This document shows positions 14,130-46,927 of a stretch of DNA of 64,000 nt, in pieces. The DNA lies in IMG/VR virus record IMGVR_UViG_3300042540_001822, positions 155,476 to 219,475 of that record; one strand, given 5' to 3'. The translations under genes and the position numbers were made by a program. Under the pieces are notes generated by a model that had not been told where the DNA came from, did no database searches, and was given only the letters and a program-made list of their open reading frames with translations. The first letter of the stretch is position 1, and each line of letters begins with the position of its first letter.

Positions 14130-14906
14130 TTATTTGTTGTTTTGTTTAAGAACTTCTTTTTCTTTATTGAAGCAATGTAAAGAAGTGATGTGCATGGTAA
14201 AAAGTCCAGGTTTTACATTTTCCCAAGATTCGGGACTTCTCTCTTTCAATTTTTCTAGAACCCAAAAAACTTTGCGGCAAGCCATGTAAATATCGTCCCT
14301 GAAATGGCGGAGGTAGTCGCAAGACCTTATGTAATACACGATGTGTAAATAATCTGCTCTTCTCATAAAATGATAACCGATTGTACAAGGAACTCGTTCA
14401 CCGTGAACAGAACCAGTGTCTTCAGGGAACCACAAAGGAAGAAATGCCTGCCTTGTAAAAGGTTCTCTTTGTAGCAAATCGATCACATCCCCAAAGTCAC
14501 CATAATGGTACCTGATACCAAACATGGTAGATTTGGGTTCTTCCGATGCAAATTTAGGCCAGAGCCTTTCGGGATAAGTGTGAGAAAATTTCTCCTCGAT
14601 TTTAAACTGGGCGTTCTTCTTTTGGTTGAAAGGCCACCATTCGTTCGAAGGTGGTGGATTTAAAGGTTGGCCCCCTATTCTTTCTTCAAAATGATCGTCC
14701 GCCCAGGGAAGATTAGGTCTGACCTCCTCGCGTAGCTCCTGAAGTGTACCTGGCACAAACATAGAGAAAGATGTATTTAAAGTTTCCCACATGTCGTCGG
14801 GAGAAGTTATACCCTGCCATCTCTCGGTCTGTACAACATATCCATAGTCGATCAATTTTTCCTTAGCCCACTTGATGGCTTGTGAGGGCTTTTGAAATGT
14901 TTTCAA
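14130..14906 (-). CDS. Thymidylate synthase homologue, dCMP hydroxymethylase-like (Asp-type)
   Basis: PCT catalytic Cys, YYIRSCDYLRHFRDD, MHITSLHCF. Confidence 0.75.
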   Translation of the reverse strand: MKTFQKPSQAIKWAKEKLIDYGYVVQTERWQGITSPDDMWETLNTSFSMFVPGTLQELREEVRPNLPWADDHFEERIGGQPLNPPPSNEWWPFNQKKNAQFKIEEKFSHTYPERLWPKFASEEPKSTMFGIRYHYGDFGDVIDLLQREPFTRQAFLPLWFPEDTGSVHGERVPCTIGYHFMRRADYLHIVYYIRSCDYLRHFRDDIYMACRKVFWVLEKLKERSPESWENVKPGLFTMHITSLHCFNKEKEVLKQNNK

Positions 14907-14925
14907 TTGAAATAAATTTTGAAAA

Positions 14926-14952
14926 TTATACAGATCAGAAACTATAAGTTTC
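14926..14952 (-). promoter_or_regulatory. Putative class II promoter
   Basis: GAAAC-N16-GTATAA upstream of TS-like gene. Confidence 0.45.
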
Positions 14953-14980
14953 TGTTTGATTTTATTTTATCTCAAAAATT

Positions 14981-15613
14981 TTATTGGTTCAACCAAAAAA
15001 ATAATTCTTCATTACCAATCAAATTTAAATCCCTAACTCTATTTTTTTGAAAAACTTTATATTCGAAATATGGGTTGTCAAAGGGAACGAGCTCTTGTCT
15101 TCCTCTTTTAATAAGACCAACTCCCTCATCGATATTAAGAGTACAAATATTTAAGTCAGATCTAGTTGCCTTTAATTTATAAATCGTTTTCCAAACCGTT
15201 CCGTTCCATGGCTGTCCCCAATTATCCTCAACTAATCTGGTATAATTTTCTTCATACATAAATGGGTCACAATCATGCAAAACAATAACACCATTTTCTG
15301 ATAAGTGATTCAAAGAATTCAATATGTCTTTTTCCACCTGATAAGAAAGATGTAATCCATCAATAAAAATTAGGTCCCACTTATAATCAGGAGGTAAATC
15401 CAACAAATTATTTTCTAGCCTAATAAAGAATTCATCCGATGTGTATTGGTATTTAACTGGATTTTCCTGGTACTCTAAACCTGGATCTACCCCGGATTTT
15501 TCTGGACATTGAATTAAATCGAAACAATCCCACGGGAATCTAACTCCTATTTCTAAATAGGTATTAAAATTTTTTGTTTGAATGATTTGGTTGATTACTT
15601 CAGATCTGTGCAT
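14981..15613 (-). CDS. Class I SAM methyltransferase (Methyltransf_24-like)
   Basis: YLEIGV, DLIFIDGLH, IVLHDC, WNGTVWK; start MHRSEV. Confidence 0.85.
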   Translation of the reverse strand: MHRSEVINQIIQTKNFNTYLEIGVRFPWDCFDLIQCPEKSGVDPGLEYQENPVKYQYTSDEFFIRLENNLLDLPPDYKWDLIFIDGLHLSYQVEKDILNSLNHLSENGVIVLHDCDPFMYEENYTRLVEDNWGQPWNGTVWKTIYKLKATRSDLNICTLNIDEGVGLIKRGRQELVPFDNPYFEYKVFQKNRVRDLNLIGNEELFFWLNQ

Positions 15614-15634
15614 GAATATAAACTTGTTTACCAA

Positions 15635-15661
15635 TTGTACTGAATTGATAATTAAAGTTTC
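15635..15661 (-). promoter_or_regulatory. Putative class II promoter
   Basis: GAAAC-N16-GTACAA. Confidence 0.4.
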
Positions 15662-15697
15662 TTGGATACAAAAAATAGCAGGATTTAATCCTATAAA

Positions 15698-16108
15698 TTA
15701 TCTATTCTTACTGCTCATTTTCCGGTACAACTTGTATTCTGGTGTTTCCTCAATGGAATCTAATTCGAATCTCTGGAAATTTCCGAACCTCATAGGTCCA
15801 TTTAAATTAAACCTTTTGTGTGGTTCGACTGAATCCTCGTAAAATTGACAAATTTGCTCGTGATATTCGGAATCTTTTTCAATAAAATATTCTTCTGGGT
15901 TGTGATAGTAGTCAAAAAGATACTCTGCCCATTCGGAGGGATTCTTTCCTCCTCCAAATTGTTCGACAAATTTTTCCATTTGGATTTCTTCATCCGTCAT
16001 GCTTATACCCAAATTTTGGAAACCTGAAATCAAATCATCTAGATCTGACCCAATATCATTATTTTCATTCAAAATTGAGAACACCCAAAAGGATTTTAAA
16101 TTATTCAT
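15698..16108 (-). CDS. Hypothetical protein with CTS-like N-terminus
   Basis: MNNLKSFWVFSILNEN. Confidence 0.55.
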   Translation of the reverse strand: MNNLKSFWVFSILNENNDIGSDLDDLISGFQNLGISMTDEEIQMEKFVEQFGGGKNPSEWAEYLFDYYHNPEEYFIEKDSEYHEQICQFYEDSVEPHKRFNLNGPMRFGNFQRFELDSIEETPEYKLYRKMSSKNR

Positions 16109-16115
16109 GATAAAT

Positions 16116-16123
16116 TATATATC
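16116..16123 (-). promoter_or_regulatory. GATATATA late-promoter-like motif
   Basis: Exact motif just upstream of start 16108. Confidence 0.55.
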
Positions 16124-16138
16124 CATTTTTTTGCCCAC

Positions 16139-16169
16139 AAAAAACCCGACCTGAATTGGGTCGGGTTTT
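16139..16169 (-). terminator. Intrinsic terminator
   Basis: 11-bp stem aaaacccgacc/ggtcgggtttt, 7-nt loop, U-run on minus strand. Confidence 0.75.
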
Positions 16170-16183
16170 AAGCTTGTCCGGAA

Positions 16184-16342
16184 TTACTGAACTGCCGTGG
16201 TTGAATCTACAGAGGTAGTGTCCGCAGATTCAACTACTGTAGAATCCACTGTTGTCTCCTCGGAAGGAGCAGTTTCTTCTGTTGGTGTAGCACATGAGCT
16301 CAGAATCAAAGCTGAGACAAGCAAGAAAAACAAATTTTTCAT
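16184..16342 (-). CDS. Small lipoprotein (52 aa, not in ORF track)
   Basis: MKNLFFLLVSALILSSCATPTEETAPSEETTVDSTVVESADTTSVDSTTAVQ; lipobox LSSC; GAATATATAA upstream, terminator downstream. Confidence 0.75.
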   Translation of the reverse strand: MKNLFFLLVSALILSSCATPTEETAPSEETTVDSTVVESADTTSVDSTTAVQ

Positions 16343-16412
16343 TTTTTTGGTTTTGAATTTTAAATTATATATTCATTTCGAAGAATGTTTCAATGAATTC
16401 AATATTTTTTAT

Positions 16413-16658
16413 TCAAATAGAAGAAGATCCATATTCCATTTCGAGGTAAGACATCTCTATTTCTGCTTTTTTCTGGTCATATCCAAATTCATTCTGAATT
16501 AAATTTACACCATATTGTCTCCATTCCAAAAGCGTTTCCCCCTTCAAAGGAAAATTCAAATTCCAATAGGGATCTTTATTTAAAACTTCTTGTTTCAGAT
16601 CAAGATAAATTCTGTGTCTCTCTTTTAGAGCGGCAAAAATTTTGTTTTTGTTTTTCAT
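16413..16658 (-). CDS. Hypothetical protein
   Basis: ORF in operon orientation. Confidence 0.55.
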   Translation of the reverse strand: MKNKNKIFAALKERHRIYLDLKQEVLNKDPYWNLNFPLKGETLLEWRQYGVNLIQNEFGYDQKKAEIEMSYLEMEYGSSSI

Positions 16659-16674
16659 TTAATTTTTGATTTTA

Positions 16675-17463: not shown

Positions 17464-17473
17464 TTTTAAAAAA

Positions 17474-18580: not shown

Positions 18581-18588
18581 TTTAATTC

Positions 18589-18596
18589 GATATATA
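18589..18596 (+). promoter_or_regulatory. GATATATA late-promoter-like motif
   Basis: Plus-strand copy upstream of plus-strand ORF 18661. Confidence 0.45.
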
Positions 18597-18660
18597 ATTT
18601 TATGGAATTTGAATAAAAGTTTTCGAATTTTGGTTTATATTTGTAAATAATTAATTAATA

Positions 18661-21313: not shown

Positions 21314-21988
21314 TTAATTGGTTTTCTTTGTGATTACCCCATCGATGATTCCATAGGCCTTGGCTTCCTCGGCATCGAGCCAAAAATCACGGGTTGCGTC
21401 CTCCTGAACCTTTGCCGGATCCTTACCACAAAAATCACCAAGTAGTTCAAATAGGATTTTATTCACCTTTTCCCATTCTTGAAAGTCAATTTTTGCGTCC
21501 TGGATGTTTCCTTCGAAGCCTCCAGAAGATTGGTGCAACATCACCTTAGAGAAGCGAAGAGAAAATCTTTTTCCCTTGGTCCCAGCACCTAATAGCACAG
21601 ATCCCATAGAAGCTGCCATGCCCGTGTTGATTGTGGAGATGTCAGATTTAATGTACTGCATGACATCCACCATTGAAAGTCCAGATTTAACCGATCCCCC
21701 TGGTGAATCGATGTGCATTGTGATGTCCCTTTCATCAACGGAATCTAAAAACATCAGCTGTGCCTGAACTACTGTCGACATGGAATCACGGACCGGACCT
21801 GCCACCCATAAAATTCTGTCCATCATGAGTCTTGAAAAAATGTCCAATTGTGTCACCCGAAGTTCTCTTTCTTCTAGAATGTAGGGGGTTAGTGAGCTTT
21901 GAACTTGTTTTTCATAGTAGTCCAAAGTGGAGGAACTAATTCCTTGAGATAGGGAGAATTTTTGAAATTCCGAAAAAAGTTTTGACAT
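21314..21988 (-). CDS. clpP: ATP-dependent Clp protease proteolytic subunit
   Basis: DIFSRLMMDRI, IDSPGGSV, AASMG (Ser), MLHQ (His), RDFWLDAEEAKAYGIID. Confidence 0.95.
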   Translation of the reverse strand: MSKLFSEFQKFSLSQGISSSTLDYYEKQVQSSLTPYILEERELRVTQLDIFSRLMMDRILWVAGPVRDSMSTVVQAQLMFLDSVDERDITMHIDSPGGSVKSGLSMVDVMQYIKSDISTINTGMAASMGSVLLGAGTKGKRFSLRFSKVMLHQSSGGFEGNIQDAKIDFQEWEKVNKILFELLGDFCGKDPAKVQEDATRDFWLDAEEAKAYGIIDGVITKKTN

Positions 21989-23833: not shown

Positions 23834-25306
23834 TTAAATTGATTCGAATTTTATACCTCCATGAGGCATTCCTTTTGTTTTAAGTGGTCTGTAACCTTTC
23901 ATTTCGTCTGTAACTACGAATGCCTTATGAGGATTAACCATTACCCCCATTCTTTTCATTAAACCTCTATTTGCCAAAAAAGGAGTGCTTTTTTGAATTC
24001 TGTCAGTAGGTGCAACCTTAACATCGGAAATTTTAACTCCATTGAGCATCAAATCCAATGATATAATAGGTCTTTTTTCTTTTTCCCTTCCAATTTCAGT
24101 GTTTGTGTAACCTATAATTTCATCTGCGAAAGTATTTTCACCTATTTTCCAATATAGAACTCCATTTTTTTCCTCCAATTCATCAGCGTGAATCGAAGAG
24201 GCTGAAGATCCATTACCAGTGTCAAATTTTGCCACCATTTTACCAATTCTGGGAATATCTAAAGTTTCTAAATAGCCAACCTCCATTTTGCTATAGCTCC
24301 AATTATTCTTGTCTATAACATAGTCAATAACATCTCCAACAATAGGTCTTCCAATTGCCTGAGAAATACCTTCTGTTCCAGGAGAAGAATTGACCTCCAA
24401 AATGTAGGGTTTACCCGATTCAGCATCAATCATGATGTCTACTCCACACCAGTGGCTTCCGACTGCATTAGCGGCTTCACAAGCGAGAGCTGCTGTTTCT
24501 TCGTCGATATCATAGGATGAAACCTGCCCTCCCAAAGAGTAATTAGTTCTAAAGTCTTTTTCAACAGCTTCTCTTTTCATGGAACCGAGAATGGTGTAAT
24601 TTCCTTTTTTTGAAATAAGTGGATCGAATCTTTTAACGATTACCTGAATTCTAAGATCAAAATTAGAATTAATCTTTTCTTGTATCAAAATTTCCTTTTC
24701 CGGGTCTAGCTTTGCTATGGTCTGATAAACCGACTTTAAAGAAGCATAAGAATCAACAATCGAAACTCCAATTCCCTGGGTCCCAGACAGTAATTTCATA
24801 ACGACAGGAAATTTACCTCCAATCTGCTCCAAAGCGGAATCTAGATTGTCTTCCCCGTTGACTAATGCGTATCTAGGAACGGGTAAACCCTCACCCTCCA
24901 AAATCCGGGAGGTAAGAAATTTGCTTTCACAAATCTCAATTGATTCTAAAGAGTTAACGCAAAAATATCTAGATGCCTCCAAATCTCTCATGATTTGTTT
25001 GGTGTAGGAGTTGGTAATAACTCCTCTCCGAGGAATAATTGCAGTTTTATCTGGTTTAATTAGAATTTCTTTGCCATCTTTTTTTCCTTCACGAACCATG
25101 TGTCCGTTGTAAATTTTTTCCAACGTTATGTTGTTTATGTCCACCACGTTGCAGACGATTCCCCGATTTTCACACTCGGCCATAAAAGATTTAGAGGTAG
25201 GGCTGGGTTTGGCGGTACCGGACAGGATAAGAATTTCTACCCCATCTGAGGACTCGGATTCATTCAAGAAGGTTGAAAAATTAACAACAGAAGGAGCAAA
25301 GGACAT
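23834..25306 (-). CDS. rimK: RimK-family ATP-grasp ligase fused to retropepsin-like (RimB/Zn_protease) domain
   Basis: CESKFLT..L...GLPVPR, PVVMKLLSGTQGIGV, IQEKI..FDLR, FRTNYSLGG, GVDI, LEVNSSPG; C-terminal KFDTGNG; start at MSFAPS. Confidence 0.85.
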   Translation of the reverse strand: MSFAPSVVNFSTFLNESESSDGVEILILSGTAKPSPTSKSFMAECENRGIVCNVVDINNITLEKIYNGHMVREGKKDGKEILIKPDKTAIIPRRGVITNSYTKQIMRDLEASRYFCVNSLESIEICESKFLTSRILEGEGLPVPRYALVNGEDNLDSALEQIGGKFPVVMKLLSGTQGIGVSIVDSYASLKSVYQTIAKLDPEKEILIQEKINSNFDLRIQVIVKRFDPLISKKGNYTILGSMKREAVEKDFRTNYSLGGQVSSYDIDEETAALACEAANAVGSHWCGVDIMIDAESGKPYILEVNSSPGTEGISQAIGRPIVGDVIDYVIDKNNWSYSKMEVGYLETLDIPRIGKMVAKFDTGNGSSASSIHADELEEKNGVLYWKIGENTFADEIIGYTNTEIGREKEKRPIISLDLMLNGVKISDVKVAPTDRIQKSTPFLANRGLMKRMGVMVNPHKAFVVTDEMKGYRPLKTKGMPHGGIKFESI

Positions 25307-25329
25307 GAAAGTGGGAAGAAATTTTTCCT

Positions 25330-25337
25330 TATATATC
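25330..25337 (-). promoter_or_regulatory. GATATATA late-promoter-like motif
   Basis: Upstream of rimK start 25306. Confidence 0.55.
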
Positions 25338-25965
25338 ACTTTTTTTCAACAAACTCTGTAAAATAATGTTGATCTGTCTCGAAATTTGTTTTATTTTCTA
25401 CCGAATAAACATTCATATCAATTTTGTAACCAGGATTTTTTTCTATCCTCTTAAATGTCCACGCATTATCCATCCAAATTATTCTATTATTTGGATAGAT
25501 GAAATAATTTCCATTGTCCATCTTGAAAACGTGTCCACATTTGTGTTCTGGTGTTTCTGAAAAATTGGTATCTAATAAGGATCTATTTTCAAAAGACCAA
25601 TCAAGAGTAAAAAGGTAAATCCCCTGTCTTTTTAAACCCGAAATTGAAATTAAATCTGCTCTTAATCCGCTCATTCTTGCCCTCACCTGAACATCGATGT
25701 ACGAGCTAAAGCAATCCCAATAAATATGCTCGCTTAAAGGCAATAATTCAGCATCCTTTTTCCAACAAAAAGCGTTAATGGGTCTTCTTGTCCAATTGAC
25801 CCCATTTTCCAAAAAAGCTTCAAATAATGGAACTCTTTTTTCAATCGAAGCAACCGAATGAACATCTGCTAAGGTAAAATCACCGTGTCCTTTTTCGTGG
25901 TTAAATAAAAATTCATTTCTGATGAAACAGGTCAGAGTTGGGATGTTGTGATTTAGATAGGGCAT
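25336..25965 (-). CDS. Conserved phage hypothetical protein
   Basis: YLNHNIP, WDCFS, TLDW, EHKC, PNNRI; recalled as common in large phages (not verified). Confidence 0.65.
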   Translation of the reverse strand: MPYLNHNIPTLTCFIRNEFLFNHEKGHGDFTLADVHSVASIEKRVPLFEAFLENGVNWTRRPINAFCWKKDAELLPLSEHIYWDCFSSYIDVQVRARMSGLRADLISISGLKRQGIYLFTLDWSFENRSLLDTNFSETPEHKCGHVFKMDNGNYFIYPNNRIIWMDNAWTFKRIEKNPGYKIDMNVYSVENKTNFETDQHYFTEFVEKK

Positions 25966-26418: not shown

Positions 26419-27573
26419 TTAAAAAAGAGTATTAATCATGAAAAGGTTGGGAGAAATCGGGTGGTGACCCATTACTTCTATGAAGCGGTTGATTGGATCT
26501 AAAATTGTTTTGGTGAACTGTTGGTCTAAATCCACCGGAGGAGCATACTCGTAAGGGTAATTTCCTTGAGAATAGGCAAAAACATTGTTTTCCTGTGGAT
26601 TATTGGTTTTAACAAAGTAAAATCTAACTTTTTCTCCGCTTCCTAACAGGGGATATTTGTCCTTGTACTTCGAGTTGTTTAGTATGTAATTATGATAGCC
26701 AGAAGCTCTGACGTGAATAGGGGTAGCCTTGGCAAATTCGAAACCTGTGGTGTCGTTTAAAATGAACTTCTCGTAGTTGTTAACCGAAATAGCCAAGGCG
26801 ATCCGTTCTGGTTCCTGGGCTTTAAAATCTTTCTTGATTGATTTTAACTCTGTAACGAACTCCCTAATGTTGAAAGACCTACCTTTCGTTAAAATAAACT
26901 TAGTTAAGTACATTAGCTTCTCACGAACAAAGGCAGGTGTGCCTCCTTTTATCATCTCAACTCCAGTGGTTTTGATGTTGCTTAGAGGTTCGAACTCCAC
27001 ACCATCTGAGTAAACTGTGTTCGTAACATATTTTTTCTTGCCAAGAAAGATGGCATTAATCGACAAGGTCTCAAGTTCGAAATCCTGATAGTTTTCCGTG
27101 TTCCATTTTTTGGCGTAAATCTCAAAGCACTTTTTAAGATAACCTTTTAATCTAAATTCATTGATTTTTAAAATCAATTCCTTTGGATCTCCTTGCCAGT
27201 TACAAGACGCCACGACTTCCTGAAATGTTACATAATTGGAGTCAGTATCACCATAGATAGTTAAGGGCCGGTGTACCTTCTTGACATCGGTGACTCCTAG
27301 TTTTTCATGAAGATCGACATCATCGTGCCAGAAATCGTGAAAGTATCTATGAATAATTTTTTCTGAATACTTGATTAAATCCTGTCCCTGAAGAGTAACT
27401 GCTTCTGCAACGTCTGTATTAAAGCAAGCAAAGAAATTATTTCCTACCGCTCCATAGATGGAGTTCATCGTTAACTTTACGGCTTGTTCCTCGTTCTTGA
27501 GCTCATTCTTTAGGGAGGTGAGCTCTTCTATTTTTAATTTTAGTTCTTTCGCATTTAGATTATGTGGTTCCAT
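26419..27573 (-). CDS. Family B DNA polymerase, C-terminal subunit (gp43B-like)
   Basis: KLTMNSIYG (motif B), YGDTDS (motif C), KKKY, TTGVEM; no exonuclease or motif A. Confidence 0.92.
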   Translation of the reverse strand: MEPHNLNAKELKLKIEELTSLKNELKNEEQAVKLTMNSIYGAVGNNFFACFNTDVAEAVTLQGQDLIKYSEKIIHRYFHDFWHDDVDLHEKLGVTDVKKVHRPLTIYGDTDSNYVTFQEVVASCNWQGDPKELILKINEFRLKGYLKKCFEIYAKKWNTENYQDFELETLSINAIFLGKKKYVTNTVYSDGVEFEPLSNIKTTGVEMIKGGTPAFVREKLMYLTKFILTKGRSFNIREFVTELKSIKKDFKAQEPERIALAISVNNYEKFILNDTTGFEFAKATPIHVRASGYHNYILNNSKYKDKYPLLGSGEKVRFYFVKTNNPQENNVFAYSQGNYPYEYAPPVDLDQQFTKTILDPINRFIEVMGHHPISPNLFMINTLF

Positions 27574-27591
27574 TCTTGTTCCCAATCTAAT

Positions 27592-31051: not shown

Positions 31052-31405
31052 TTAGATTTCTCCATCTGTATATATCTTTCCTGGACTATTTTTTATTAGA
31101 TAAACAATTAGGGTATTAATAATGACACTTGCCCCGCTAATCCAAAATCCAGAAAAAAGTATTGTTAGAATTTGGTAAAAATACCCATCATATTCCAATA
31201 AAAACATGAAAGGATTAACCATCTGATTGGCGGAAATCAGCAAACCAAATAAGATTCCCACCCAAAAGCCAGAACACTGCATACAGGTCAATAATTTTCC
31301 CAAAGTTGGGTACATTACCTGCAAATAAATTCTGAGAGGATCAAATATGGAACCATTGACTAAAATACTGGTGATGGCCCAACCTAAAAAACTAAATTCA
31401 ATCAT
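31052..31405 (-). CDS. DUF1360-like membrane protein
   Basis: LLTCMQCSGFWVG; multiple TM segments. Confidence 0.65.
   Translation of the reverse strand: MIEFSFLGWAITSILVNGSIFDPLRIYLQVMYPTLGKLLTCMQCSGFWVGILFGLLISANQMVNPFMFLLEYDGYFYQILTILFSGFWISGASVIINTLIVYLIKNSPGKIYTDGEI
31069..31076 (-). promoter_or_regulatory. GATATATA late-promoter-like motif
   Basis: Upstream of start 31042. Confidence 0.55.
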
Positions 31406-32439
31406 GACGGAAAGATTTTCTTGTAAGTAGACAAGAAATCCCTTTGTGTTTCATTTAATTCTTTAGGAATTCTTAATTTTAATCTGATTAATATGTCTCC
31501 TCTGAAATCAGAGTTAAATTCAGGAATTCCCTTTCCTGCTAACCGGAGAATCTTTCCTGGATCTGATCCAGGAGGTATTGAAATTTTATATTCTCCGTCT
31601 GGAATTTCTAAATTTGGAATTTTAACCTCTGCACCCATACAGGCATCATAAAAATCAACATCCATATCACAATACAAATTCAGGGAATCACGTTTGTAAA
31701 AATGATGTTGAATATCCTCTACAGACACAATTAAGTCTCCAGGATCACATGGGGATTTTTCAAAATCTCCACCTCCGTCGATCTTGAAATTTATACCCGT
31801 AACTGAACCTTTAGGAACCGTAATGTCTACCTGTGTTGTCTGTCTTATGGTTCCAGAACCAGAACAAGAATGGCAAGGTGTTTTGGCAGTTTCTCCAAAT
31901 CCACCACAGGAAAAACACGTTCCATCCACAGCCATTTGACCAAACCCTGTATTTACAATTTTTCTATTTACTCCTGTTCCATTACACTGAACACAAAAAA
32001 CGACCTCAGCATTATGTGCTCCTGTCCCTTTGCACGGTTCACAAGGAAATCTTTTGAATAGTGTTACCTTTTTCTGTGCTCCCTTTAGTACATCCGCTAG
32101 ATTAATTTGCAATCTGGCGTTTATATTTTTCCCCTTTCGAATTTGTGTTTTATGTTGATGCCAGGAGTTTGCTGAATTGAAATTATTAAAAAAATCTGCA
32201 AATGGACTTCCCCAGTTTGCTTGATTAGGTCCGCTCCACTTCGGAGAATCATATGCTTTCTTTTTTGAAGGATCCCCTAAAGTTTCGTAGGCTTCGTTTA
32301 TTTGTTTAAATTTTGCCTCTGCAGAGGTGTCTCCTGGATTTTTATCTGGATGATATTTTAAGGCCAATCTCCTGTAACTTTTTTTTATTGCATCAGAAGA
32401 CGCTTCTCTTCCAACTTCTAAAATTTGATAAAAGTCCAT
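31402..32439 (-). CDS. dnaJ: Chaperone DnaJ
   Basis: J-domain HPD, four CxxCxGxG repeats, C-terminal GDL/GKGIP motifs. Confidence 0.95.
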   Translation of the reverse strand: MDFYQILEVGREASSDAIKKSYRRLALKYHPDKNPGDTSAEAKFKQINEAYETLGDPSKKKAYDSPKWSGPNQANWGSPFADFFNNFNSANSWHQHKTQIRKGKNINARLQINLADVLKGAQKKVTLFKRFPCEPCKGTGAHNAEVVFCVQCNGTGVNRKIVNTGFGQMAVDGTCFSCGGFGETAKTPCHSCSGSGTIRQTTQVDITVPKGSVTGINFKIDGGGDFEKSPCDPGDLIVSVEDIQHHFYKRDSLNLYCDMDVDFYDACMGAEVKIPNLEIPDGEYKISIPPGSDPGKILRLAGKGIPEFNSDFRGDILIRLKLRIPKELNETQRDFLSTYKKIFPS

Positions 32440-33122: not shown

Positions 33123-34043
33123 TTAAACATCAAAATCTTTCAGATATTTCAATAAAGCCTTTTCCTTCATTTTTACCTCGAATTCAATTGAAAAATCGTA
33201 ACCGTAATTTTTTACCTTCTCATAAATCCAATCTGAGTGTGCAAGATCCTTTGTTGAAGAATCTTCCCATTGTTTTTTCGAATCTGAATAGTGAACAATT
33301 GGACTGATTTCTTTTGGCCAGGTTTTGATACAAAGGTCAAGTGCTTCTTGTTCCGATAGATCAGATGGATTACACTTATGATGTAAATAATCATAGGTCA
33401 AGGGAACTCCAATTTTTTTGAAAACAAGTTCGTACAATTCAGAAGGAGTGAATCCCGATTTTTTGTCGTCATTTTCTACAACCAAACGTTTTTTAACTGA
33501 TTCGGGTAACATCTGAAAATTTTCACAAAATCTAGATGCAGCTTCTTCCTTAGTGGGTTGGGAAGTGTAAACATGAACGTTGATCGGATAAAAGTGTGTT
33601 TGGTCCAATCCCATGAGATCCATGATTTCTGCGTGCTGTCTTAAATCTTTTACTGCCTTGATCACAACATCTTCCCTCTGTGATGCTAGAACGGAATAAG
33701 GCGATGGATGAAATGTAATTCTTTGATCTCCTGCTTTGGCAATAGATCCAGCCTCTGCCAAAACAGTTTTTATTTCCTCGAAGTGTGGAAGATCATGAAA
33801 TTCATATTCGCTGTACCAAGGGAAAATATCAGATGACATTCTATACATCCGGATTCCCATTTCATTGTTCCATGAAATAATCTTAACCAAATCTAAGCAG
33901 TTCAAAAGTGCCGTTTCGGAAGCGAAGGAAATTCCTTTTTCTTCAAAAGTTTTTTTGACCATAGACCGATTGGTGGTAATTCTATTTAATCCTTTACCTT
34001 CACCCAAAGTAAGGTTTATACAACAATATCCAAATCTGTGCAT
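33123..34043 (-). CDS. uvsE: UV damage endonuclease (UVDE)
   Basis: FGYCCIN, MYRMSSDIFP, RITFHP, RLVVENDD, YDYLHH, HYSDS, AHSD, EVKMKE. Confidence 0.93.
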   Translation of the reverse strand: MHRFGYCCINLTLGEGKGLNRITTNRSMVKKTFEEKGISFASETALLNCLDLVKIISWNNEMGIRMYRMSSDIFPWYSEYEFHDLPHFEEIKTVLAEAGSIAKAGDQRITFHPSPYSVLASQREDVVIKAVKDLRQHAEIMDLMGLDQTHFYPINVHVYTSQPTKEEAASRFCENFQMLPESVKKRLVVENDDKKSGFTPSELYELVFKKIGVPLTYDYLHHKCNPSDLSEQEALDLCIKTWPKEISPIVHYSDSKKQWEDSSTKDLAHSDWIYEKVKNYGYDFSIEFEVKMKEKALLKYLKDFDV

Positions 34044-40074: not shown

Positions 40075-41313
40075 TTATTTAACAGGATCTGGCTGATTTT
40101 GTGATTTCAATTTCATAGTCGCAGCCTTTTTAAAGTTTTCCAAATTCCGGTAGATTCTTTCTTTTTCTCCTGGATTGAGCAATTCAAAAAAAGGCATTTC
40201 TGTAACTTTCTTCATTTTTTCGTAGGACATCTCTGGATTTCCCGTGTGGTAAGCAGCCAAAGAAAATTCGTCCAACAATCTCCATTGCCAAATTTCGGGT
40301 TCTACAAATAAGATGTCTCCGGTTCCTGGATTTTTCATCGCCATCGTACCATAAGTAAAAGATAACACAAATCTATTTTGTTCTCTTAATTTTCTCATAC
40401 AGTGAAACACCGCTTCCAGCCTCTCTGGTCGGAATTCCCAAGCTTTAGAATAGGCCTGAATAACTTCGTCTGGATGTCTACCAAGTTTTTCTTTTAATCT
40501 CCCTATCATGTACAAAGAGTAATAAACCTCTTCTGGCCAGCCTCCAGCATTCACCCTCTTTTCATAGGCCTGTAAAGCCTTGAGATTTTGATTTGAATCA
40601 CGATAACTTTGGGCGAGATAAAACATGTACCTGGTATTGTTTGGGTCCTCCGCCAAGGCTTTCTCCAAAATTTCTGCGTCCTTCGAATACTTCTCTTCTA
40701 AAGATGAAGCCCTTTTTAACGGGGAGATGTTGGCGTTCACCAAACATCTATCGTTAGGAATCTGTGCCTGATATAAAGGTTGCTTTCCTGGTAAATCTAA
40801 ATATTCATGAAGAACGCCTTTGTAAACCCAATTTTGGTCAGACTTCACAATTTGAGCTCTAAAGTATTGTAAAGAATTCAATTTATATTGAATCTGAAAG
40901 CAGTCTACGCCATCTGGCAAATCGGAGAAAGGATTTGTTCCAGGATTCAGATTTTCAAACAAATCATCGGCATCAATAATCCATCTATAATCACATTTTC
41001 CGTAGGATAATTCTAAACTTTCTGTACGATTGACTTCGAAGTTAACCCAAGGTCTTTCGTGTAGTTCACCCGGGATGTTTAATTCTTCCATGGTACTCCG
41101 GATCTCCTCAATGGTGTTGTCCTTTGAACCAGTATCACAGATTACCCAGTAGGAAATAAAAGGAGCAACCCTCTGTAAACATTTTCTAATTGTGTCCCCT
41201 TCATCTTTAACGATCATAACCAAACAGAATGTGAACTTTTGTTTGGGGGATAAACTTGTGGAAGGTGATGGAGATTTTTTGATCTGTGGTTTATTCTTTG
41301 TGGATTTAGACAT
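40075..41313 (-). CDS. Glycosyltransferase family 2 with TPR repeats
   Basis: LVMIVKDE, ICDTGSKD, PWVNF, IIDADD, YKGVLHE; TPR RYMFYLAQSY. Confidence 0.85.
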   Translation of the reverse strand: MSKSTKNKPQIKKSPSPSTSLSPKQKFTFCLVMIVKDEGDTIRKCLQRVAPFISYWVICDTGSKDNTIEEIRSTMEELNIPGELHERPWVNFEVNRTESLELSYGKCDYRWIIDADDLFENLNPGTNPFSDLPDGVDCFQIQYKLNSLQYFRAQIVKSDQNWVYKGVLHEYLDLPGKQPLYQAQIPNDRCLVNANISPLKRASSLEEKYSKDAEILEKALAEDPNNTRYMFYLAQSYRDSNQNLKALQAYEKRVNAGGWPEEVYYSLYMIGRLKEKLGRHPDEVIQAYSKAWEFRPERLEAVFHCMRKLREQNRFVLSFTYGTMAMKNPGTGDILFVEPEIWQWRLLDEFSLAAYHTGNPEMSYEKMKKVTEMPFFELLNPGEKERIYRNLENFKKAATMKLKSQNQPDPVK

Positions 41314-42067: not shown

Positions 42068-42730
42068 TTATTGTGTATTAGAATCAGTTTTGGGTTTATC
42101 CGATTTACTTTTCCGTAGGTCTAACTGGTTCACAATTTTTTTGTACAGTCTATCTATCCCCACTCCAGAATCAAACTTTTTAAGCTTTCTGCTTTTTTGG
42201 TACAGTTCGATAAGAGGAGCAGTTTTTTCGGTGTACGTTTGAAATCTTTTTTTAATCACTTCTGGATCTTTATCATCTTCTCTATTTTCTTTTTCTGCTC
42301 TAGATAAAATCCTTTCTGTAGCGGTCTTTTCATCCAAATCCAAATAGATCGTATGACTTAAACCCAATCCCATTTTTCCGAGCAAAGAGTCTAACATTCC
42401 AGCCTGCTTTACAGTTCTAGGAAAACCATCAAAAATAATACCCATTCCAGGATCCAATTTTTTAAGTTCTTTTCTGAGCATCGATACCATCGTTTTATCA
42501 TCGATGTATTCCCCCTTGGCAATCTTTGCTTTCAATTCTGGTTCCTTCGAATTACGAATCAGATCTCCTGTAGAAATGTGATTGTAACCCTCTTTATCAG
42601 CGAGTCTTTTTGAGAAGGTCCCCTTCCCAGATCCAGGAGGACCCATGATAACTAAGATCTTTCCCTGAAAATCAGGAAGTTCTCTTTCTTGAAGATGAAT
42701 GAATTCGTCAAATTTCTTAACTGTGCTCAT
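42068..42730 (-). CDS. adk: Adenylate kinase (short LID) with CTS-like N-terminal extension
   Basis: GPPGSGKGT, HISTGDLIR, FDGFPRT, REDD, RFQTY; start [10 protein letters not shown]. Confidence 0.92.
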   Translation of the reverse strand: MSTVKKFDEFIHLQERELPDFQGKILVIMGPPGSGKGTFSKRLADKEGYNHISTGDLIRNSKEPELKAKIAKGEYIDDKTMVSMLRKELKKLDPGMGIIFDGFPRTVKQAGMLDSLLGKMGLGLSHTIYLDLDEKTATERILSRAEKENREDDKDPEVIKKRFQTYTEKTAPLIELYQKSRKLKKFDSGVGIDRLYKKIVNQLDLRKSKSDKPKTDSNTQ

Positions 42731-42980
42731 ATTTGATAATTGTATTTTGGATTGGAAATTTAAAGATTGGGACTCTTTTACCGTCTTGAGTCTCTTGAAA
42801 AACCTCATAAGAATTGTAATGGGCCTGAGAAAGTTGAATGGTCATGATTTCCTTGTATATTCCTCTTATATGAGGATTTTCAGATTCGATTTGAAGGGTG
42901 TGTTTTTTGGTGTTAAAGATTAAAATATTTGTCATGGTTTTTTTGTTAGGATTGAAAATTAAGATCCACAGGCGATACAA
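42717..42980 (-). CDS. Hypothetical protein
   Basis: ORF between nrdA and adk; true start likely MTNILIF. Confidence 0.5.
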
Positions 42981-45424
42981 TCATCAGGATTATCCAAACT
43001 ACAACTTAAATCTTCTAAAGTTTGGTTGGCTAGAACTTGTAATTCTTCATTTGGGGTTTCCAAAGGTTTTTTGAAAACTTTGGGCTCTTCTTTTTTGGGT
43101 GTTACCTGATATCTAGAAACATCAATTCCTAATCCTGTCATGGCATCTACAGCCGACTTGGTACGTAAATAGTACATGCCGGTTTTCAAACCCAATTTCC
43201 AAGAATGGAAATGAGCGGCAGTTAGTTTGGCGGCGTTGACTCCTTCGATGAAAAGGTTGAGGGATTGGGATTGACAAATGAATCTACCTCTTTCTGCCGA
43301 CATCTCAATCAGATCTTTCTGCTTGATTTCCCAAACTGTTTTGTAAACCTCCTTGATGTCATCCGGAATGTTTGGAATGTTTTGAACGGATCCTTTGTGA
43401 ATGATAATCAAATTTTTAACATCTTCATTCCAAAGTCCTAGATTAATCAAATCTTTTACCAGATATTTATTGATTATGATAAATTCTCCGCTCAGGGTCC
43501 TTCTGGTATAAATGTTAGAGGTAAAGGGTTCAAAAGCTTCATTATTGCCCATGATTTGAGCTGTGCTCGCGGTTGGCATCGGTGCTAAAAGCAAAGAATT
43601 TCTGGCTCCATGTTTAATAACATCTTTTCTTAATTTGTCCCAATTCCATCTGCCAGAGAGTTCAGAGTCGGATACGTCCCAAAGGTTGAATTGGAATTTT
43701 CCTTGACTCAAGGGAGATCCTGGAAAACTTTCATAGTGTCCTTCTTTCTTAGCCAAATCGACAGAAGCTGTCATGGAGGCGAAATAAATTGTTTCAAAAA
43801 TTTCAGAGTTGATCTTTCTTGCTTCAGGAGAAGTAAAGGGTATTCCCATAATGGCAAAAAGGTCTGCTAGCCCTTGAATTCCGATACCGATTGGTCTGTG
43901 TCTAAAGTTGGAATTTTTAGTTTCTGGGGTTGGATAAAAATTGACATCAATTACTTTATTTAAATTCAGTGTAGTTTGATAGGCCACATTGTAAAGCATG
44001 TCATGATCCACATCACATTTTTTTCTTACAATTTTAGATGTTCTGGCATCTGTAGATTTTAGGAACTTATTCACCGCTATGGAAGCCAAATTGCAAACTG
44101 CAGTTTCGTCTTTACTGCTAAATTCTATAATTTCTGTACACAAATTAGAAGATTTGATTGTTCCTAAATTTTGTTGGTTTGATTTTCTATTGGCAGCATC
44201 TTTAAACAAAATGTAAGGGGTTCCGGTTTCAATTTGTGAATCCAAAATCTTGCCCCACAGATCCCGGGCCTTGATTGTTTTTCTGGCCTTCCCTGCCTGT
44301 TCTGCCTCCAAATAAGAAGCGTTGAATTCCTCACCAAATTTTTCATGAAGATTGGGAACTTCCGACGGGGAAAACAAAGACCAAGTAGAATCTTCATTAA
44401 CTCTCTCCATAAACAAATCTGGTATCCACAAAGCCAAAAACAAATCTCTGGCTCTTCTTTCTTCTTTGCCTGTGTTCTTTCTTAATTCCAAAAAATCTTC
44501 GACATCGGAATGCCAGGGTTCCAAGTAGATGGCAAAGCTTCCTTTTCTCTTTCCACCTCCTTGGTCCACATACCTAGCAGTTTCGTTATAAACCCTAAGC
44601 ATGGGAATGATCCCGTTTGATTTGCCATTTGTTCCTCTGATGTAAGAATCCGTTGCCCTAACATTATGAATCGCTAAACCAATTCCTCCGGCATGCTGAG
44701 AAATCAAGGCAACGTCAGAGAGAGTTTTATAAATTCCGGGAATGGAATCTTCTGACATGGTTAACAAAAAGCAGGAAGACAACTGGGGCTTCCTAGTTCC
44801 AGCATTGAAAAGGGTTGGGGTTGCATGAGTCATCATGTGATTGGAAAGCAACTCATATGTCTTGATCGTGTTCTTGATGTCATTACCCCAGATTCCTACC
44901 GCCACTCTCATGTACATGTGTTGAGGTGTTTCTGCCGGTTTATCAAGCATCTTAAGAAGATAACTTTTCTCAAGAGTTTTAAATCCAAAATATTCGAAGT
45001 TAAAATCTCTGTCATGAATGACAGCGGAATCTAGTGTGTCTTTGTGTTCCATCACCACACGATAGGTTTCTTCTGAAATTAGACCCGATTCCAATCCGGT
45101 CTCAGGGTCCACATATGAGAATAGATCCTGAATCGTTTCTGAGAATTTCTTCTTGGTTGTTTTGTGCAATCTAGAAACTGCTATTCTGGAAGCCAAAATG
45201 GAGTAATCTGGATGCCTGGGAATAAGTGAAGCTGCAGTTTCTGCAGCTAAATTGTCAAGCTCCCAGGTTGAAATTCCATCATAGATTCCTGCAATAACTT
45301 TTTGTGCTATTTCCATGGTATCAACGAATTCTGAGTTCAACCCATAGGTTACCTTTCGAATTCGATTTGAAATTTTATCGAATCTGACCGCTTCTCTTGA
45401 ACCGTCTCTTTTGTGTACAAACAT
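42959..45424 (-). CDS. nrdA: Class Ia ribonucleotide reductase alpha subunit with ATP cone
   Basis: VHKRDG ATP cone, [38 protein letters not shown]-terminal CIACGS; no intein. Confidence 0.97.
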
Positions 45425-45440
45425 TTTTTATGAATTTTTT

Positions 45441-46424
45441 TTAAAAATCTACATCTAAATCGAAAGCATCGGATGAACCATTTAGAACTCCCGCCTTCTG
45501 ATACTCTGCCACTCTTTTCTCAAAGAAGTTTGTTTTCCCCTGTAAAGAAATATTCGTCATAAAGTCGAATGGATTTTCGGATCCATACACTTTTGAACAT
45601 TCCAAAGAAACCAAAAGTCTATCTGCTACAAATTCCAAATATTGACTCATCAGATCAGAGTTCATGCCAATAAGTCTAACAGGCAAAGATTCCAAAATGA
45701 ATTCTTTCTCGATCTCCAAGGCACTGACAATAATTTCTTTGATTTTTTCTTCCGATACCTTGTTCGCCAGATATTTGTTATGAAGAAGAACTGCAAAATC
45801 GCAGTGCATTCCTTCGTCACGAGAAATGAGTTCGTTTGAAAATGAAAGGCCTGGCATTAGCCCTCTTTTCTTCAACCAGAAGATTGAACAGAAAGAACCA
45901 GAAAAGAAAATTCCCTCAACTGCTGCAAAGGCAATTAATCTTTCCTGAAAGTTAGGAGATGAAATCCATTTCAAAGCCCAATCTGCTTTTTTCTTCACAG
46001 CAGGAATAGTTTCAATGGCGTGAAATAAACGGTGTTTTTCCTGGGGATCAGAAATATAGGTATCAATCAACAAAGAATACGTTTCCGAGTGAATGTTTTC
46101 CATCATGATTTGAAACCCGTAGAAAAATTTTGCTTCAGTGTATTGAACTTCTCTGACAAAATTTTCTGCCAAATTTTCATTTACAATTCCATCCGATGCA
46201 GCAAAGAAAGCCAGAACGTGTTTGATGAAGTGTTTTTCATCTTCATTAAGCTTGTTTCTCCAGTGATCTAAATCGGAAGAAAGATCAATTTCCTCTGCGG
46301 TCCAAATGCATGCCATTTGATTTTTATACTGAGACCAAAGTTCGTCGTGTTGAATTGGGAAAATAACGAATCGATCTGGATTTTCTTGTAGGATCGGTTC
46401 TGGTAGCGAATATTCTTCCATCAT
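45441..46424 (-). CDS. nrdB: Class Ia ribonucleotide reductase beta subunit
   Basis: [48 protein letters not shown]; start MMEEY. Confidence 0.97.
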
Positions 46425-46459
46425 AGGGTTTCTATTTATTTTTATGTTTTTAGTAAGAT

Positions 46460-46927
46460 TTAATAATTGTTTGCCTGCCTTCTGCGATTTTCCTCGTTTT
46501 TGGACATGTACATGTTGTACATTTCCTCTGCAGTCATACCGATCGAAACTGCATAATTCATGAAGAAATGAAGTATATCCACAATTTCGAATTTGCATTC
46601 TCTTTGGTCAGAATCGGACAAATCTGAAAATTTAATTTCGGAATAGGTGGCATATTTTTGCTTCCATTTTTTCCAAACTGCATTTCCGTGTCCGTCCTTG
46701 ATTCCGCCCAAAGCATCTGTGGCTTCGTGGATTTCATCAATTATGGAGTGGCTATTCATGTGCCAAAAATCCATTACATCTCTAAGTGTCATGTTTGAAA
46801 AGTCATAACCATAAACTGTAGCCTGTGTGGATGCCTGTAAATTTAAAATGTCTCCAAGTGTGTCTTTAGATTCTGCGTACAAATTTTTGATTTCTAGATT
46901 AGAACATTGATTGTCAGTGTTTGCCAT
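46460..46927 (-). CDS. T4 gp56-like dCTP/dUTP pyrophosphatase (all-alpha)
   Basis: [36 protein letters not shown] match recalled T4 gp56 segments AVWKKWK, KFELVDIFHF, KNKHNFERQDNGY. Confidence 0.85.

What the first reader, a model, noticed from the sequence alone, without database searches (positions are those of the whole stretch)
14130..46927. Candidate cytosine hypermodification pathway: Asp-type thymidylate synthase homologue in a sugar island plus gp56-like dCTPase
Seen: ORF 14130-14906 has PCT and RSCDYLRHFRDD. Aligned to E. coli ThyA RSCDVFLGLPFN (Asn177) and T4 gp42 RSNDVVFGFRND (Asp179), the specificity position is Asp. Established: Asn selects dUMP, Asp selects dCMP; T4 pairs gp42 with gp56 dCTPase to replace C by hmC and then glucosylates it. 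ORF 46460-46927 closely follows gp56 segments. The TS homologue sits among amino-sugar aminotransferases, acetyltransferases, methyltransferases and GTs. Inference: genomic C is replaced by a 5-substituted C, possibly decorated with an unusual acetylated or methylated amino sugar rather than glucose.
Basis: partly seen in the sequence, partly recalled or inferred. Interest (0 to 1): 0.8.

Follow-up and report, generated by a model that had tools for sequence, protein, structure and literature searches.

The report
Asp-type thymidylate-synthase relative plus dCTPase
A large freshwater phage carries an unusual cytosine-type relative of thymidylate synthase and a T4-like dCTPase, a pairing that suggests its DNA cytosine is chemically replaced, but the neighbouring sugar genes are a recent add-on rather than part of that pathway.

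Summary
ORF 14130-14906 (-) is a thymidylate-synthase (TS)-fold protein with the catalytic Cys and Asp at the base-specificity position. ORF 46460-46927 (-) is a full-length homologue of T4 gp56 (35% identity).

The TS homologue belongs to a large, phage-borne and apparently uncharacterised TS family. Asp177, Arg143, Gln127 and His173 (E. coli numbering) are near-invariant. This signature matches none of the four known product classes: methyl, hydroxymethyl, hydroxy on C, or hydroxymethyl on U.

In at least six of eight cultured phages examined, including mycobacteriophage Muddy, the family sits in a cassette: kinase, NTP pyrophosphatase, hypothetical protein, TS, usually a deaminase, then DNA polymerase I. 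The pyrophosphatase was confirmed as gp56-like in three of them. So a pre-replicative dCMP-modifying route is the best reading (about 0.5). The substituent cannot be predicted.

The sugar-decoration idea is not supported. Of 80 related viral loci, only the window's own sublineage has sugar or methyltransferase genes beside the TS gene, and their content differs within it. About 30 relatives with the same backbone have none.

The main rival is an ordinary dTTP-supply module. LC-MS of DNA from cultured carriers would decide.

The parts
14130..14906 (-). TS-fold enzyme of an uncharacterised phage family. It has catalytic Cys174, Asp205 (ThyA N177 position), Arg171 (L143 position), Ser195/Arg152 (deoxyribose type) and Asp197 (D169 kept). 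Predicted dCMP C5-modifying enzyme.
46460..46927 (-). gp56-like all-alpha nucleoside triphosphate pyrophosphatase (dCTPase/dUTPase family)
   Evidence: 35% identity to T4 gp56 over the full length; phrog_173 at 2e-19; 1426 phage records hit; conserved at 72-95% identity in clade relatives
42068..42808 (-). Adenylate/UMP-CMP-kinase-family NMP kinase next to the RNR genes. Candidate kinase for the modified dCMP (inferred only).
   Evidence: Pfam ADK 1.5e-35; PDB adenylate and UMP-CMP kinases; conserved in the same position in L013 at 56% identity
42959..46598 (-). Class I ribonucleotide reductase large (42959-45424) and small (45441-46598) subunits. The small subunit's true start is probably near 46421. 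Nucleotide-supply context of the gp56-like gene.
   Evidence: relative's NrdB is 326 aa
14981..20330 (-). Upstream arm of the accessory island: Methyltransf_24, unknown, GT2, FkbM methyltransferase, cupin, unknowns. Not part of the conserved pathway.
   Evidence: natural variants lack the Methyltransf_24 gene
5121..14123 (-). Downstream arm of the accessory island: FkbM methyltransferase, unknown 368 aa, DegT aminotransferase (ArnB/PseC-like), GNAT, CmcI-like O-methyltransferase, truncated DegT, NeuD/PglD-type acetyltransferase, PhyH dioxygenase, GT2, two unknowns. In relatives the TS gene is followed directly by homologues of 4774-5244 and 4143-4538.
40075..41313 (-). Conserved GT2 + TPR glycosyltransferase in the nucleotide-metabolism module. 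Its architecture and weak PDB hits resemble the protein glycosyltransferases GmaR and SunS, not known DNA glycosyltransferases.
   Evidence: 76% identical orthologue in L013

Best explanation
The window comes from a huge freshwater phage (the identical IMG/VR contig is 219 kb). It encodes two conserved enzymes of a pre-replicative deoxycytidylate-modification route. Inferred steps: (1) the gp56-like pyrophosphatase hydrolyses dCTP (and dUTP) to the monophosphate, emptying the dCTP pool and feeding dCMP; (2) the TS-fold enzyme binds dCMP through Asp205, Ser195 and Arg152/Arg194, attacks C6 with Cys174 and installs a substituent on C5; (3) an NMP kinase (candidate 42068-42808) and the host NDP kinase make the triphosphate; (4) the phage B-family polymerase incorporates it, so genomic C is largely replaced by a 5-substituted C. 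Shown here: fold, residue signature, homology to gp56, conservation, and recurrent gene neighbourhood. Not shown: substrate, product, cofactor, or any modification in DNA. The substituent is not predictable. The family has Arg at the position that is Leu in ThyA, Asn in the one 5mC-type enzyme aligned here (PaMx74) and Asp/Glu in hydroxymethylases. It keeps Asp169, unlike the hydroxylases. The adjacent amino-sugar/methyltransferase island is a lineage-specific accessory module, most likely for a glycan on a protein or cell-surface target, and is not a required part of the route.
For: TS fold with high confidence. Cytosine-type and deoxyribose-type residues are near-invariant across the family: D177 in 90/92, S167 in 86/92, R126 in 91/92, C146 in 90/92, and the same in 64 sequences. 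The determinants are taken from PMC8670742, PMC13326640 and PMC5175136. The best PDB matches are the cytosine-specific members MilA and the HY126 dCMP hydroxylase. gp56 homology is full length. The ten organism names most often hit by gp56 are all enterobacterial, Acinetobacter or Aeromonas phages, and Synechococcus phages, second most frequent for the polymerase query, are not among them. Recurrent partnership: at least six of eight cultured phages examined show kinase, NTP pyrophosphatase, hypothetical protein, TS, usually a deaminase, then DNA polymerase I. In Clostridium phage A2 the upstream genes are unannotated. The pyrophosphatases of Muddy and Zuko, and more weakly Opt-155, are gp56 homologues. 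Metagenomic locus L087 has gp56-like, TS and deaminase within 10 kb. Both genes are conserved in the clade and appear to share one 349,306-bp contig. Thymidylate-kinase-like kinases beside cytosine-modifying TS homologues are an established pattern (PMC13326640, Table 1). No DHFR is annotated in any of the cassette regions examined, unlike the 5mC phage PaMx74.
Against: No experiment or read-level signal for modified DNA is available; only Illumina contigs exist. Within the siphophage cassettes, every component except Asp177 and the extra hypothetical protein also fits ordinary dTTP synthesis. The family is only about 13-15% identical to characterised enzymes, so transferring the Asn/Asp rule is an inference. 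The ThyA Glu58 equivalent appears to be Asn or Asp, so even folate dependence is uncertain. No gp1-type dNMP kinase or dCMP deaminase was found in the window. gp56-family enzymes also act as dUTPases.
Confidence: 0.5

Rival explanations
1. Ordinary thymidylate supply. The TS-fold enzyme is the phage's thymidylate synthase, acting either directly on dUMP despite Asp177 or through 5-methyl-dCMP that a deaminase converts to the thymine nucleotide. The gp56-like enzyme is a dUTPase/dCTPase feeding it. Virion DNA contains canonical C, or 5mC only as a by-product.
For: All database annotations call the family thymidylate synthase. The siphophage cassette (thymidylate kinase, dUTPase, TS, dCMP deaminase) is the classical dTTP-synthesis set. 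Asp177 TS homologues next to deaminases were shown to make 5mdCMP, with the deaminase proposed to yield dTTP (bioRxiv 10.1101/2024.12.05.627091). NCBIfam's weak best hit is the methanogen-type thymidylate synthase.
Against: Asp at position 177 is invariant in the 64-sequence alignment and present in 90 of 92 representatives. N177D mutants switch ThyA to dCMP (cited in PMC8670742). The family does not detect Xp12/PaMx74-type enzymes by BLAST, and its signature differs from PaMx74's. No DHFR accompanies it. A conserved extra protein of unknown role sits in the cassette. In the Xp12 model, 5mC still replaces C in DNA.
Confidence: 0.25
2. One reading: C is replaced by a 5-substituted C that is then decorated with an acetylated or methylated amino sugar made by the flanking island and transferred by its GT2 enzymes.
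For: The island flanks the TS gene on both sides. GT-A-fold DNA glycosyltransferases exist and are often found near TS homologues (bioRxiv 10.1101/2023.12.21.572611). GT2_a hits TarP/TarS-type enzymes, the PDB neighbours reported for those DNA GT-A enzymes. Decoration genes vary between close relatives in T-even phages too (PMC13326640).
Against: Of 80 related loci, only five (the window's own contig and two near-duplicate pairs, all with TS at least 90% identical) carry a cluster of island genes. NeuD/PglD, PhyH and GT2_b occur only in the window's own contig, and DegT/GNAT in three loci. A further relative outside that set, at 94% TS identity, has methyltransferases and a nuclease but no aminotransferase or GT2 there. 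About 30 relatives with the same backbone have none. No nucleotidyltransferase or 4,6-dehydratase was found in the island. No GT-B or T4-type glucosyltransferase was found. The TS lacks the hydroxymethylase and hydroxylase signatures that would create an O-acceptor. A natural variant lacks the adjacent methyltransferase.
Confidence: 0.1
3. The TS-fold enzyme is a MilA/BcmA-like CMP hydroxymethylase serving a nucleoside or sugar-nucleotide natural-product pathway encoded by the island, unrelated to DNA.
For: MilA is the best PDB match by sequence profile and by fold. The gene is embedded among sugar-tailoring enzymes.
Against: The ribose determinants of MilA (Ala for Ser167, Lys for Arg126) are not present; the family keeps Ser and Arg (PMC5175136). 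The gene is conserved without the island. Elsewhere it lies in DNA-replication cassettes next to DNA polymerase I.
Confidence: 0.03

Closest known systems
T4 gp42 dCMP hydroxymethylase with gp56 dCTPase/dUTPase
   Same: TS fold, catalytic Cys, Arg-Ser-x-Asp motif, Asp at the base-specificity position, Thr after the Cys. It is paired with a true gp56 homologue (35% identity) in a T4-like replication module.
   Different: About 15% identity by Foldseek or 21% by hhalign. Arg instead of Asp145 three residues before the Cys. His instead of Ser94 two residues before the Tyr. Gln for the second Arg of the RR pair, His for Gly173, Phe for Tyr218. The Glu60 equivalent appears to be Asn. No T4-type glucosyltransferase. 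The two genes lie 32 kb apart.
Xp12/PaMx74-type dCMP methyltransferase with a 5mC-selective deaminase
   Same: Asp177 TS homologue found next to a dCMP-deaminase-family gene, a MazG-type pyrophosphatase and DNA polymerase I in siphophages. The gene order matches that of the family's cassettes.
   Different: No BLAST-level relationship. PaMx74 has Asn143, Arg127, Gly173 and Tyr209, with an adjacent DHFR. No deaminase or DHFR was found in the window.
5-hydroxy-dCMP synthases (RB69 gp48, DLP3 gp80, HY126 AfhB), flavin-dependent
   Same: Asp177 and Phe at 209 (as in Mosigvirus AV110). AfhB is among the best structural matches. A thymidylate-kinase-like kinase neighbour is a shared pattern.
   Different: The diagnostic D169N change is absent: Asp is kept in 63 of 64 family members. 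Position 143 is Arg, not Glu.
MilA CMP 5-hydroxymethylase (mildiomycin pathway)
   Same: Best PDB hit by profile (2e-9) and by fold (TM 0.71). Asp at the specificity position.
   Different: The family keeps the deoxyribose-type Ser167 and Arg126. Position 143 is Arg, not Asp. The context is phage DNA replication.

Membership tests
Thymidylate synthase superfamily (fold) | TS alpha/beta fold | tested here: met
   AlphaFold pLDDT 93.9. Foldseek matches to MilA, AfhB, ThyA and T4 dCH at E 1e-13 to 1e-10, TM 0.6-0.73. Viral TS models also match.
Thymidylate synthase superfamily (fold) | Catalytic Cys after Pro, the Arg166-Ser167-x-Asp169 motif, and Arg126, Tyr94 and His207 | tested here: met
   C174, R194, S195, D197, R152, Y111 and H244 are invariant or nearly so.
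Thymidylate synthase superfamily (fold) | Pfam PF00303 gathering score | tested here: not met
   20.6 bits against a cut-off of 24.3; only residues 137-199 align. PHROG 160 matches at 5e-25.
Thymidylate synthase superfamily (fold) | Catalytic Glu58 that activates methylene-THF | tested here: inconclusive
   hhalign and MAFFT put Asn65 (N 41, D 14 of 64) at that position. An invariant Glu75-Arg76 lies seven residues after the Trp. The N-terminal alignment is weak.
Cytosine-specific TS homologues | Asp in place of ThyA Asn177 | tested here: met
   D205; 64 of 64 and 90 of 92 family members.
T4 gp42-type dCMP hydroxymethylase | Asp/Glu three residues before the catalytic Cys and Ser/Thr two residues before Tyr96 (PMC6400193) | tested here: not met
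   Arg171 (64/64) and His109 (60/64).
5-hydroxy-dCMP synthase | D169N (PMC13326640) | tested here: not met
   Asp197 is kept in 63 of 64; the Mosigvirus AV110 control shows Asn.
Xp12/PaMx74-type dCMP methyltransferase | Sequence relationship to the characterised enzymes and a non-acidic residue at position 143 | tested here: not met
   No Xp12/PaMx74 match among the tblastn hits listed. The PaMx74 signature is N/P/D/D with R127 and G173, against R/T/D/D with Q127 and H173.
MilA/BcmA CMP hydroxymethylase | Ala for Ser167 and Lys for Arg126 (ribose preference, PMC5175136) | tested here: not met
   Ser195 and Arg152 are conserved.
gp56 dCTPase/dUTPase family | Full-length homology to T4 gp56 | tested here: met
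   35% identity, E 3e-29, residues 6-155 against 5-171. Pfam dUTPase_2 is below its cut-off (21.3 against 22.9).
gp56 dCTPase/dUTPase family | dCTP/dCDP hydrolysis | not testable with these tools
   Needs an enzyme assay.
T4-like glycosylated-cytosine system | A DNA glycosyltransferase conserved together with the TS homologue | tested here: not met
   Only GT2 proteins were found in the Pfam-scanned ORFs. The island GT2s are absent from most relatives. The conserved GT2-TPR resembles protein glycosyltransferases.

The most novel reading that the evidence does not exclude
The family represents a fifth product class of the TS superfamily. Its remodelled active site (Arg143, His173, His two residues before the Tyr, possible loss of Glu58) would install a C5 substituent on dCMP that is neither methyl, hydroxymethyl nor hydroxyl, perhaps by trapping the exocyclic methylene with another nucleophile or by using a non-folate cofactor. 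A still undescribed cytosine derivative would then replace C in the DNA of many phages, from mycobacteriophage Muddy and Gordonia, Streptomyces and Serratia siphophages to freshwater huge phages.
Probability: 0.2. Interest if true: 0.85.

Novelty: new variant of a known kind. Interest (0 to 1): 0.6.

Why it matters
TS-superfamily enzymes are the entry point of nearly all known pre-replicative pyrimidine hypermodifications. Residue signatures are now used to predict the base a phage makes. This family carries the cytosine determinant but a signature that fits no characterised product. It is abundant: about 4,900 sequences at 90% clustering and about 300 clusters at 50%. It also occurs in easily grown phages, including the therapeutic phage Muddy. 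If it yields a modified cytosine, that would affect restriction and CRISPR evasion, sequencing behaviour and the innate-immune properties of those phages. It would also add a new chemistry to the family. The question is directly testable with existing isolates.

Tried and rejected
- Megablast of the island against phage genomes found nothing.
- Pfam alone would have left both key ORFs below threshold.
- Five further literature searches found no paper that characterises this family or reports the DNA composition of its cultured carriers. The Yersinia P744 paper has nothing on restriction or modification.
- Public runs holding the window are Illumina lake metagenomes kept as contigs. Laying reads gave no information on base modification, and the two 'RNA' runs look like DNA. 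It only showed strain variants lacking the Methyltransf_24 gene.
- Long family members were tested as possible informative fusions. They are intein or LAGLIDADG insertions instead.
- hhalign of the family profile against all window ORFs of at least 150 aa found no second TS-fold paralogue.
- BLAST of the siphophage cassette's kinase, deaminase and hypothetical partner found no homologues in the window.
- The Methyltransf_24 gene next to NrdA in a relative gave no BLAST match at E below 1e-5 to the one next to the TS gene.
A metagenomic equivalent was used instead.
- The MilA-like CMP reading was rejected on the ribose determinants.
Full report
**Setting.** All substantial ORFs of the window lie on the minus strand, and G+C is about 29-41% in 2-kb windows. 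The gene content is that of a very large phage with a T4-like replication and nucleotide module:
- RNR large and small subunits, topoisomerase II subunits, a gp32-like protein, a helicase and UvdE.
- A B-family polymerase in two parts.
- ClpP, DnaJ, HSP20, and RimK-like and glutamine-synthetase-like proteins.

The polymerase N-part is closest to uncultured megaphage records (39% identity). An identical locus lies on a 219-kb IMG/VR contig (L017). The sequence occurs in many lake and freshwater metagenomes.

**Observation check.** The 258-aa ORF at 14130-14906 (-) contains VPCT and RSCDYLRHFRDD. HMMER, MAFFT and hhalign agree on the alignment. Cys174 falls on the catalytic Cys146, Arg194-Ser195-x-Asp197 on Arg166-Ser167-x-Asp169, and Asp205 on Asn177.

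Pfam's TS model is hit only below its cut-off, but PHROG 160 is hit at 5e-25. An AlphaFold model built on 64 homologues has pLDDT 93.9. It superposes on MilA, the HY126 dCMP hydroxylase AfhB, many ThyA structures and T4 dCMP hydroxymethylase at E 1e-13 to 1e-10. So the ORF is a genuine TS-fold protein.

The 155-aa ORF at 46460-46927 aligns end to end with T4 gp56 (35% identity, E 3e-29). It hits 1426 phage records, those listed mostly annotated dCTPase. Both observations are confirmed.

**A distinct family.** The protein has about 4,900 relatives at 90% clustering and about 300 clusters at 50% identity with E below 1e-10. In cultured phages it occurs in Gordonia, Mycobacterium (Muddy, FF47), Streptomyces, Microbacterium, Curtobacterium, Serratia, Yersinia, Brevundimonas, Pseudomonas and, more distantly, Clostridium phages. 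It is annotated 'thymidylate synthase' in most listed records.

Near-invariant positions across 92 and 64 diverse members, in ThyA numbering:

| Position | Family residue |
|---|---|
| Cys146 | kept |
| Asn177 | Asp |
| Leu143 | Arg |
| Arg127 | Gln |
| His147 | Thr/Ser |
| Asp169 | kept |
| Leu172-Gly173 | Arg-His |
| Tyr209 | Phe |
| Trp83, Tyr94, Arg126, Arg166, Ser167, His207 | kept |

The literature gives diagnostic residues:
- Asn177 selects dUMP and Asp selects dCMP (cited in PMC8670742 and PMC13326640).
- Asp/Glu three residues before the Cys, plus Ser/Thr two before the Tyr, marks hydroxymethylases (PMC6400193).
- D169N marks flavin-dependent 5-hydroxy-dCMP synthases (PMC13326640).
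- Ser167-to-Ala and Arg126-to-Lys mark the ribonucleotide-preferring MilA (PMC5175136).

I aligned the window protein and eight family members with reference enzymes fetched here: ThyA, PaMx74 (5mC), T4 gp42 (5hmC), Mosigvirus AV110 (5hoC type) and SPO1 gp29 (5hmU). The family's combination (Arg143, Thr147, Asp169, Asp177, His at Tyr-2, Gln127, His173) matches none of them. It is cytosine-type and deoxyribose-type. It fails the hydroxymethylase, hydroxylase and MilA tests and is not related at BLAST level to the Xp12/PaMx74 methylases. The ThyA Glu58 equivalent seems to be Asn or Asp, but that part of the alignment is weak.

**Partnership with a gp56-like enzyme.** The eight cultured phages examined were Yersinia P744, Serratia Opt-155, Muddy, Zuko, PMBT14, Strzyga, Clostridium A2 and GTE2. 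In at least six, the family member sits in one conserved cassette: thymidylate-kinase-like kinase, NTP pyrophosphatase, a 250-350-aa hypothetical protein, the TS homologue, usually a dCMP-deaminase-family protein, then DNA polymerase I. Strzyga has the pyrophosphatase, hypothetical protein, TS and polymerase, with an unassigned P-loop protein further upstream and no annotated deaminase. In Clostridium A2 the genes upstream of the TS gene are all annotated as hypothetical proteins.

The pyrophosphatases of Muddy and Zuko are BLAST-detectable homologues of T4 gp56 and of the window's ORF; that of Opt-155 is weaker. A metagenomic locus (L087) has a 52%-identical gp56-like gene, the TS homologue and a deaminase within 10 kb.

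In the huge-phage clade the two genes are about 32 kb apart, but both are conserved (TS 62-100%, gp56-like 72-95% identity). Both searches list the same longest-contig length, 349,306 bp, so they appear to share that contig. The gp56-like gene keeps its place between the polymerase N-part and the RNR genes, followed by an adenylate/UMP-CMP-type kinase.

Structural neighbours of related TS clusters include viral fusions to dCMP deaminase and to thymidylate kinase. These recurrent links tie the family to deoxypyrimidine metabolism for DNA synthesis. Together with Asp177 they make a dCMP-modifying route the best reading.

**Why it is not settled.** Apart from Asp177 and the extra hypothetical protein, the siphophage cassette is also what a plain dTTP-supply module would look like. 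For Xp12-type phages, 5-methyl-dCTP is itself proposed as the precursor of dTTP via a 5mC-selective deaminase (bioRxiv 10.1101/2024.12.05.627091). I therefore keep a substantial rival (0.25) in which the end product is thymidylate.

Against that rival:
- Asp177 is near-invariant across the family.
- No DHFR is annotated in any cassette region examined, in contrast to PaMx74.
- The cassettes contain an extra conserved protein.

No sequencing data that could reveal modification exist for this phage.

**The sugar island.** The flanking genes are indeed glycan-type enzymes:
- an ArnB/PseC-like aminotransferase and a truncated second copy;
- a NeuD/PglB/VioB-family acetyltransferase above its NCBIfam cut-off, and a GNAT;
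- a rhamnosyl-O-methyltransferase-like protein, two FkbM methyltransferases and a Methyltransf_24 protein;
- a cupin, a PhyH dioxygenase and two GT2 proteins.

No sugar nucleotidyltransferase or 4,6-dehydratase was found.

Comparative data separate the island from the TS gene. Of 80 IMG/VR loci with relatives at 51-100% identity, five carry a cluster of island genes beside the TS gene: the window's own contig and two near-duplicate pairs, all with TS at least 90% identical. One further locus (L036, TS 69%) has only the cupin and one unknown island ORF, and six show weak FkbM-like matches. Within that sublineage the content differs. The NeuD/PglD-type acetyltransferase, PhyH and the second GT2 occur only in the window's contig. 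A further relative with 94% identical TS, outside that set, has methyltransferases, a 621-aa protein and a non-specific nuclease instead.

About 30 relatives share the backbone. Where the flank reaches them, the polymerase C-part and RimK lie upstream of the TS gene. Homologues of 4774-5244, 4143-4538 and 1795-2055 lie downstream, with no island-gene homologues between them. Contigs from other lake samples show a variant in which the Methyltransf_24 gene next to the TS gene is replaced by a short sequence.

The one glycosyltransferase that is conserved, GT2 with TPR repeats at 40075-41313, lies in the nucleotide module. It weakly resembles the protein glycosyltransferases GmaR and SunS. GT-A-fold DNA glycosyltransferases do exist (bioRxiv 10.1101/2023.12.21.572611), so a lineage-specific DNA decoration cannot be excluded. 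It is not supported, and the TS signature does not predict an oxygen acceptor. I give it 0.1.

**Verdict.** The finding is real and its core inference is reasonable but unproven: a cytosine-directed TS homologue working with a gp56-like dCTPase. The T4 analogy is only partial, the product is unknown, and the sugar link is most likely positional. The result is a new variant of a known kind of system. A clean experimental test is available in cultured phages that carry the same family.

Noticed in passing
window 47009-48580 (-) and 26419-27585 (-): The B-family DNA polymerase is encoded in two separate genes about 20 kb apart. The N-part holds the exonuclease and the start of the polymerase domain; the C-part covers Pfam DNA_pol_B positions 137-451. 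Both parts keep their separate positions in relatives: the C-part next to topoisomerase II and the N-part next to the gp56-like gene.
   Followed up: partly
L012:4144-4932, L094:9093-9974 (and Muddy gp47, Zuko gp75, Opt-155 gp50): The hypothetical protein always encoded just upstream of the TS homologue in the siphophage cassettes may itself be a second, very divergent TS-fold protein. Atlas structure TM to TS clusters is 0.53-0.64. PMBT14's 262-aa uncharacterised protein appears in the Foldseek list of the window's TS model at E 1.9e-3. hhalign is not significant (E 0.35). A heterodimer with the Gln127 family is conceivable. No counterpart was found in the window.
   Followed up: partly
proteins P0121, P0217, P0232, P0262 (relatives of 14130-14906): Several long family members carry an intein (Hint/Intein_splicing) or LAGLIDADG insertions inside the TS domain, as is typical of conserved, important phage genes.
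   Followed up: partly
window 14909-15725: Contigs from other lake samples join 14909 to 15725 and 14920 to 15670, with 83 or 41 other letters between. These are natural variants lacking the Methyltransf_24 gene next to the TS gene.
   Followed up: no
window 9188-9814 (-): A 208-aa ORF matches only the first quarter of the DegT aminotransferase profile (positions 23-98 of 360). It is probably a truncated remnant of a second aminotransferase. A 79% identical copy exists in L019/L020.
   Followed up: no
window 45441-46598 (-): The longest ORF for the RNR small subunit overlaps the gp56-like ORF by 139 bases. The orthologue in L013 is 326 aa, so the real start is probably about 59 codons downstream and the overlap is an artefact.
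   Followed up: partly
window 40075-41313 (-): A GT2 + TPR glycosyltransferase is conserved (76% identity in L013) within the nucleotide-metabolism module. Its weak PDB hits are the protein glycosyltransferases GmaR and SunS, which hints at phage-directed protein glycosylation.
   Followed up: partly
L009:6145-6732; L007:17924-18523: Close relatives carry a DNA/RNA non-specific endonuclease (Endonuclease_NS) near the TS homologue. In L009 it lies roughly where the window has a GT2 gene. A phage-encoded non-specific nuclease would fit a genome protected by base modification, but this is only a hint.
   Followed up: no
window 53319-55232 (-): A 637-aa protein combines an RNA-ligase-like N-terminal region with a cytidylyltransferase-like region. 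It is conserved at 64% identity in L013.
   Followed up: no
window 48727-49128 (-), 33123-34043 (-), 21314-21988 (-), 31402-32439 (-), 49197-49553 (-), 23834-25339 (-), 2833-3894 (-): The phage encodes an HhH-GPD DNA glycosylase, a UvdE UV endonuclease, ClpP, a full DnaJ, HSP20, a RimK-like ATP-grasp ligase and a glutamine-synthetase-like protein. Orthologues of the glycosylase, HSP20, RimK-like and glutamine-synthetase-like genes were seen in relatives.
   Followed up: no
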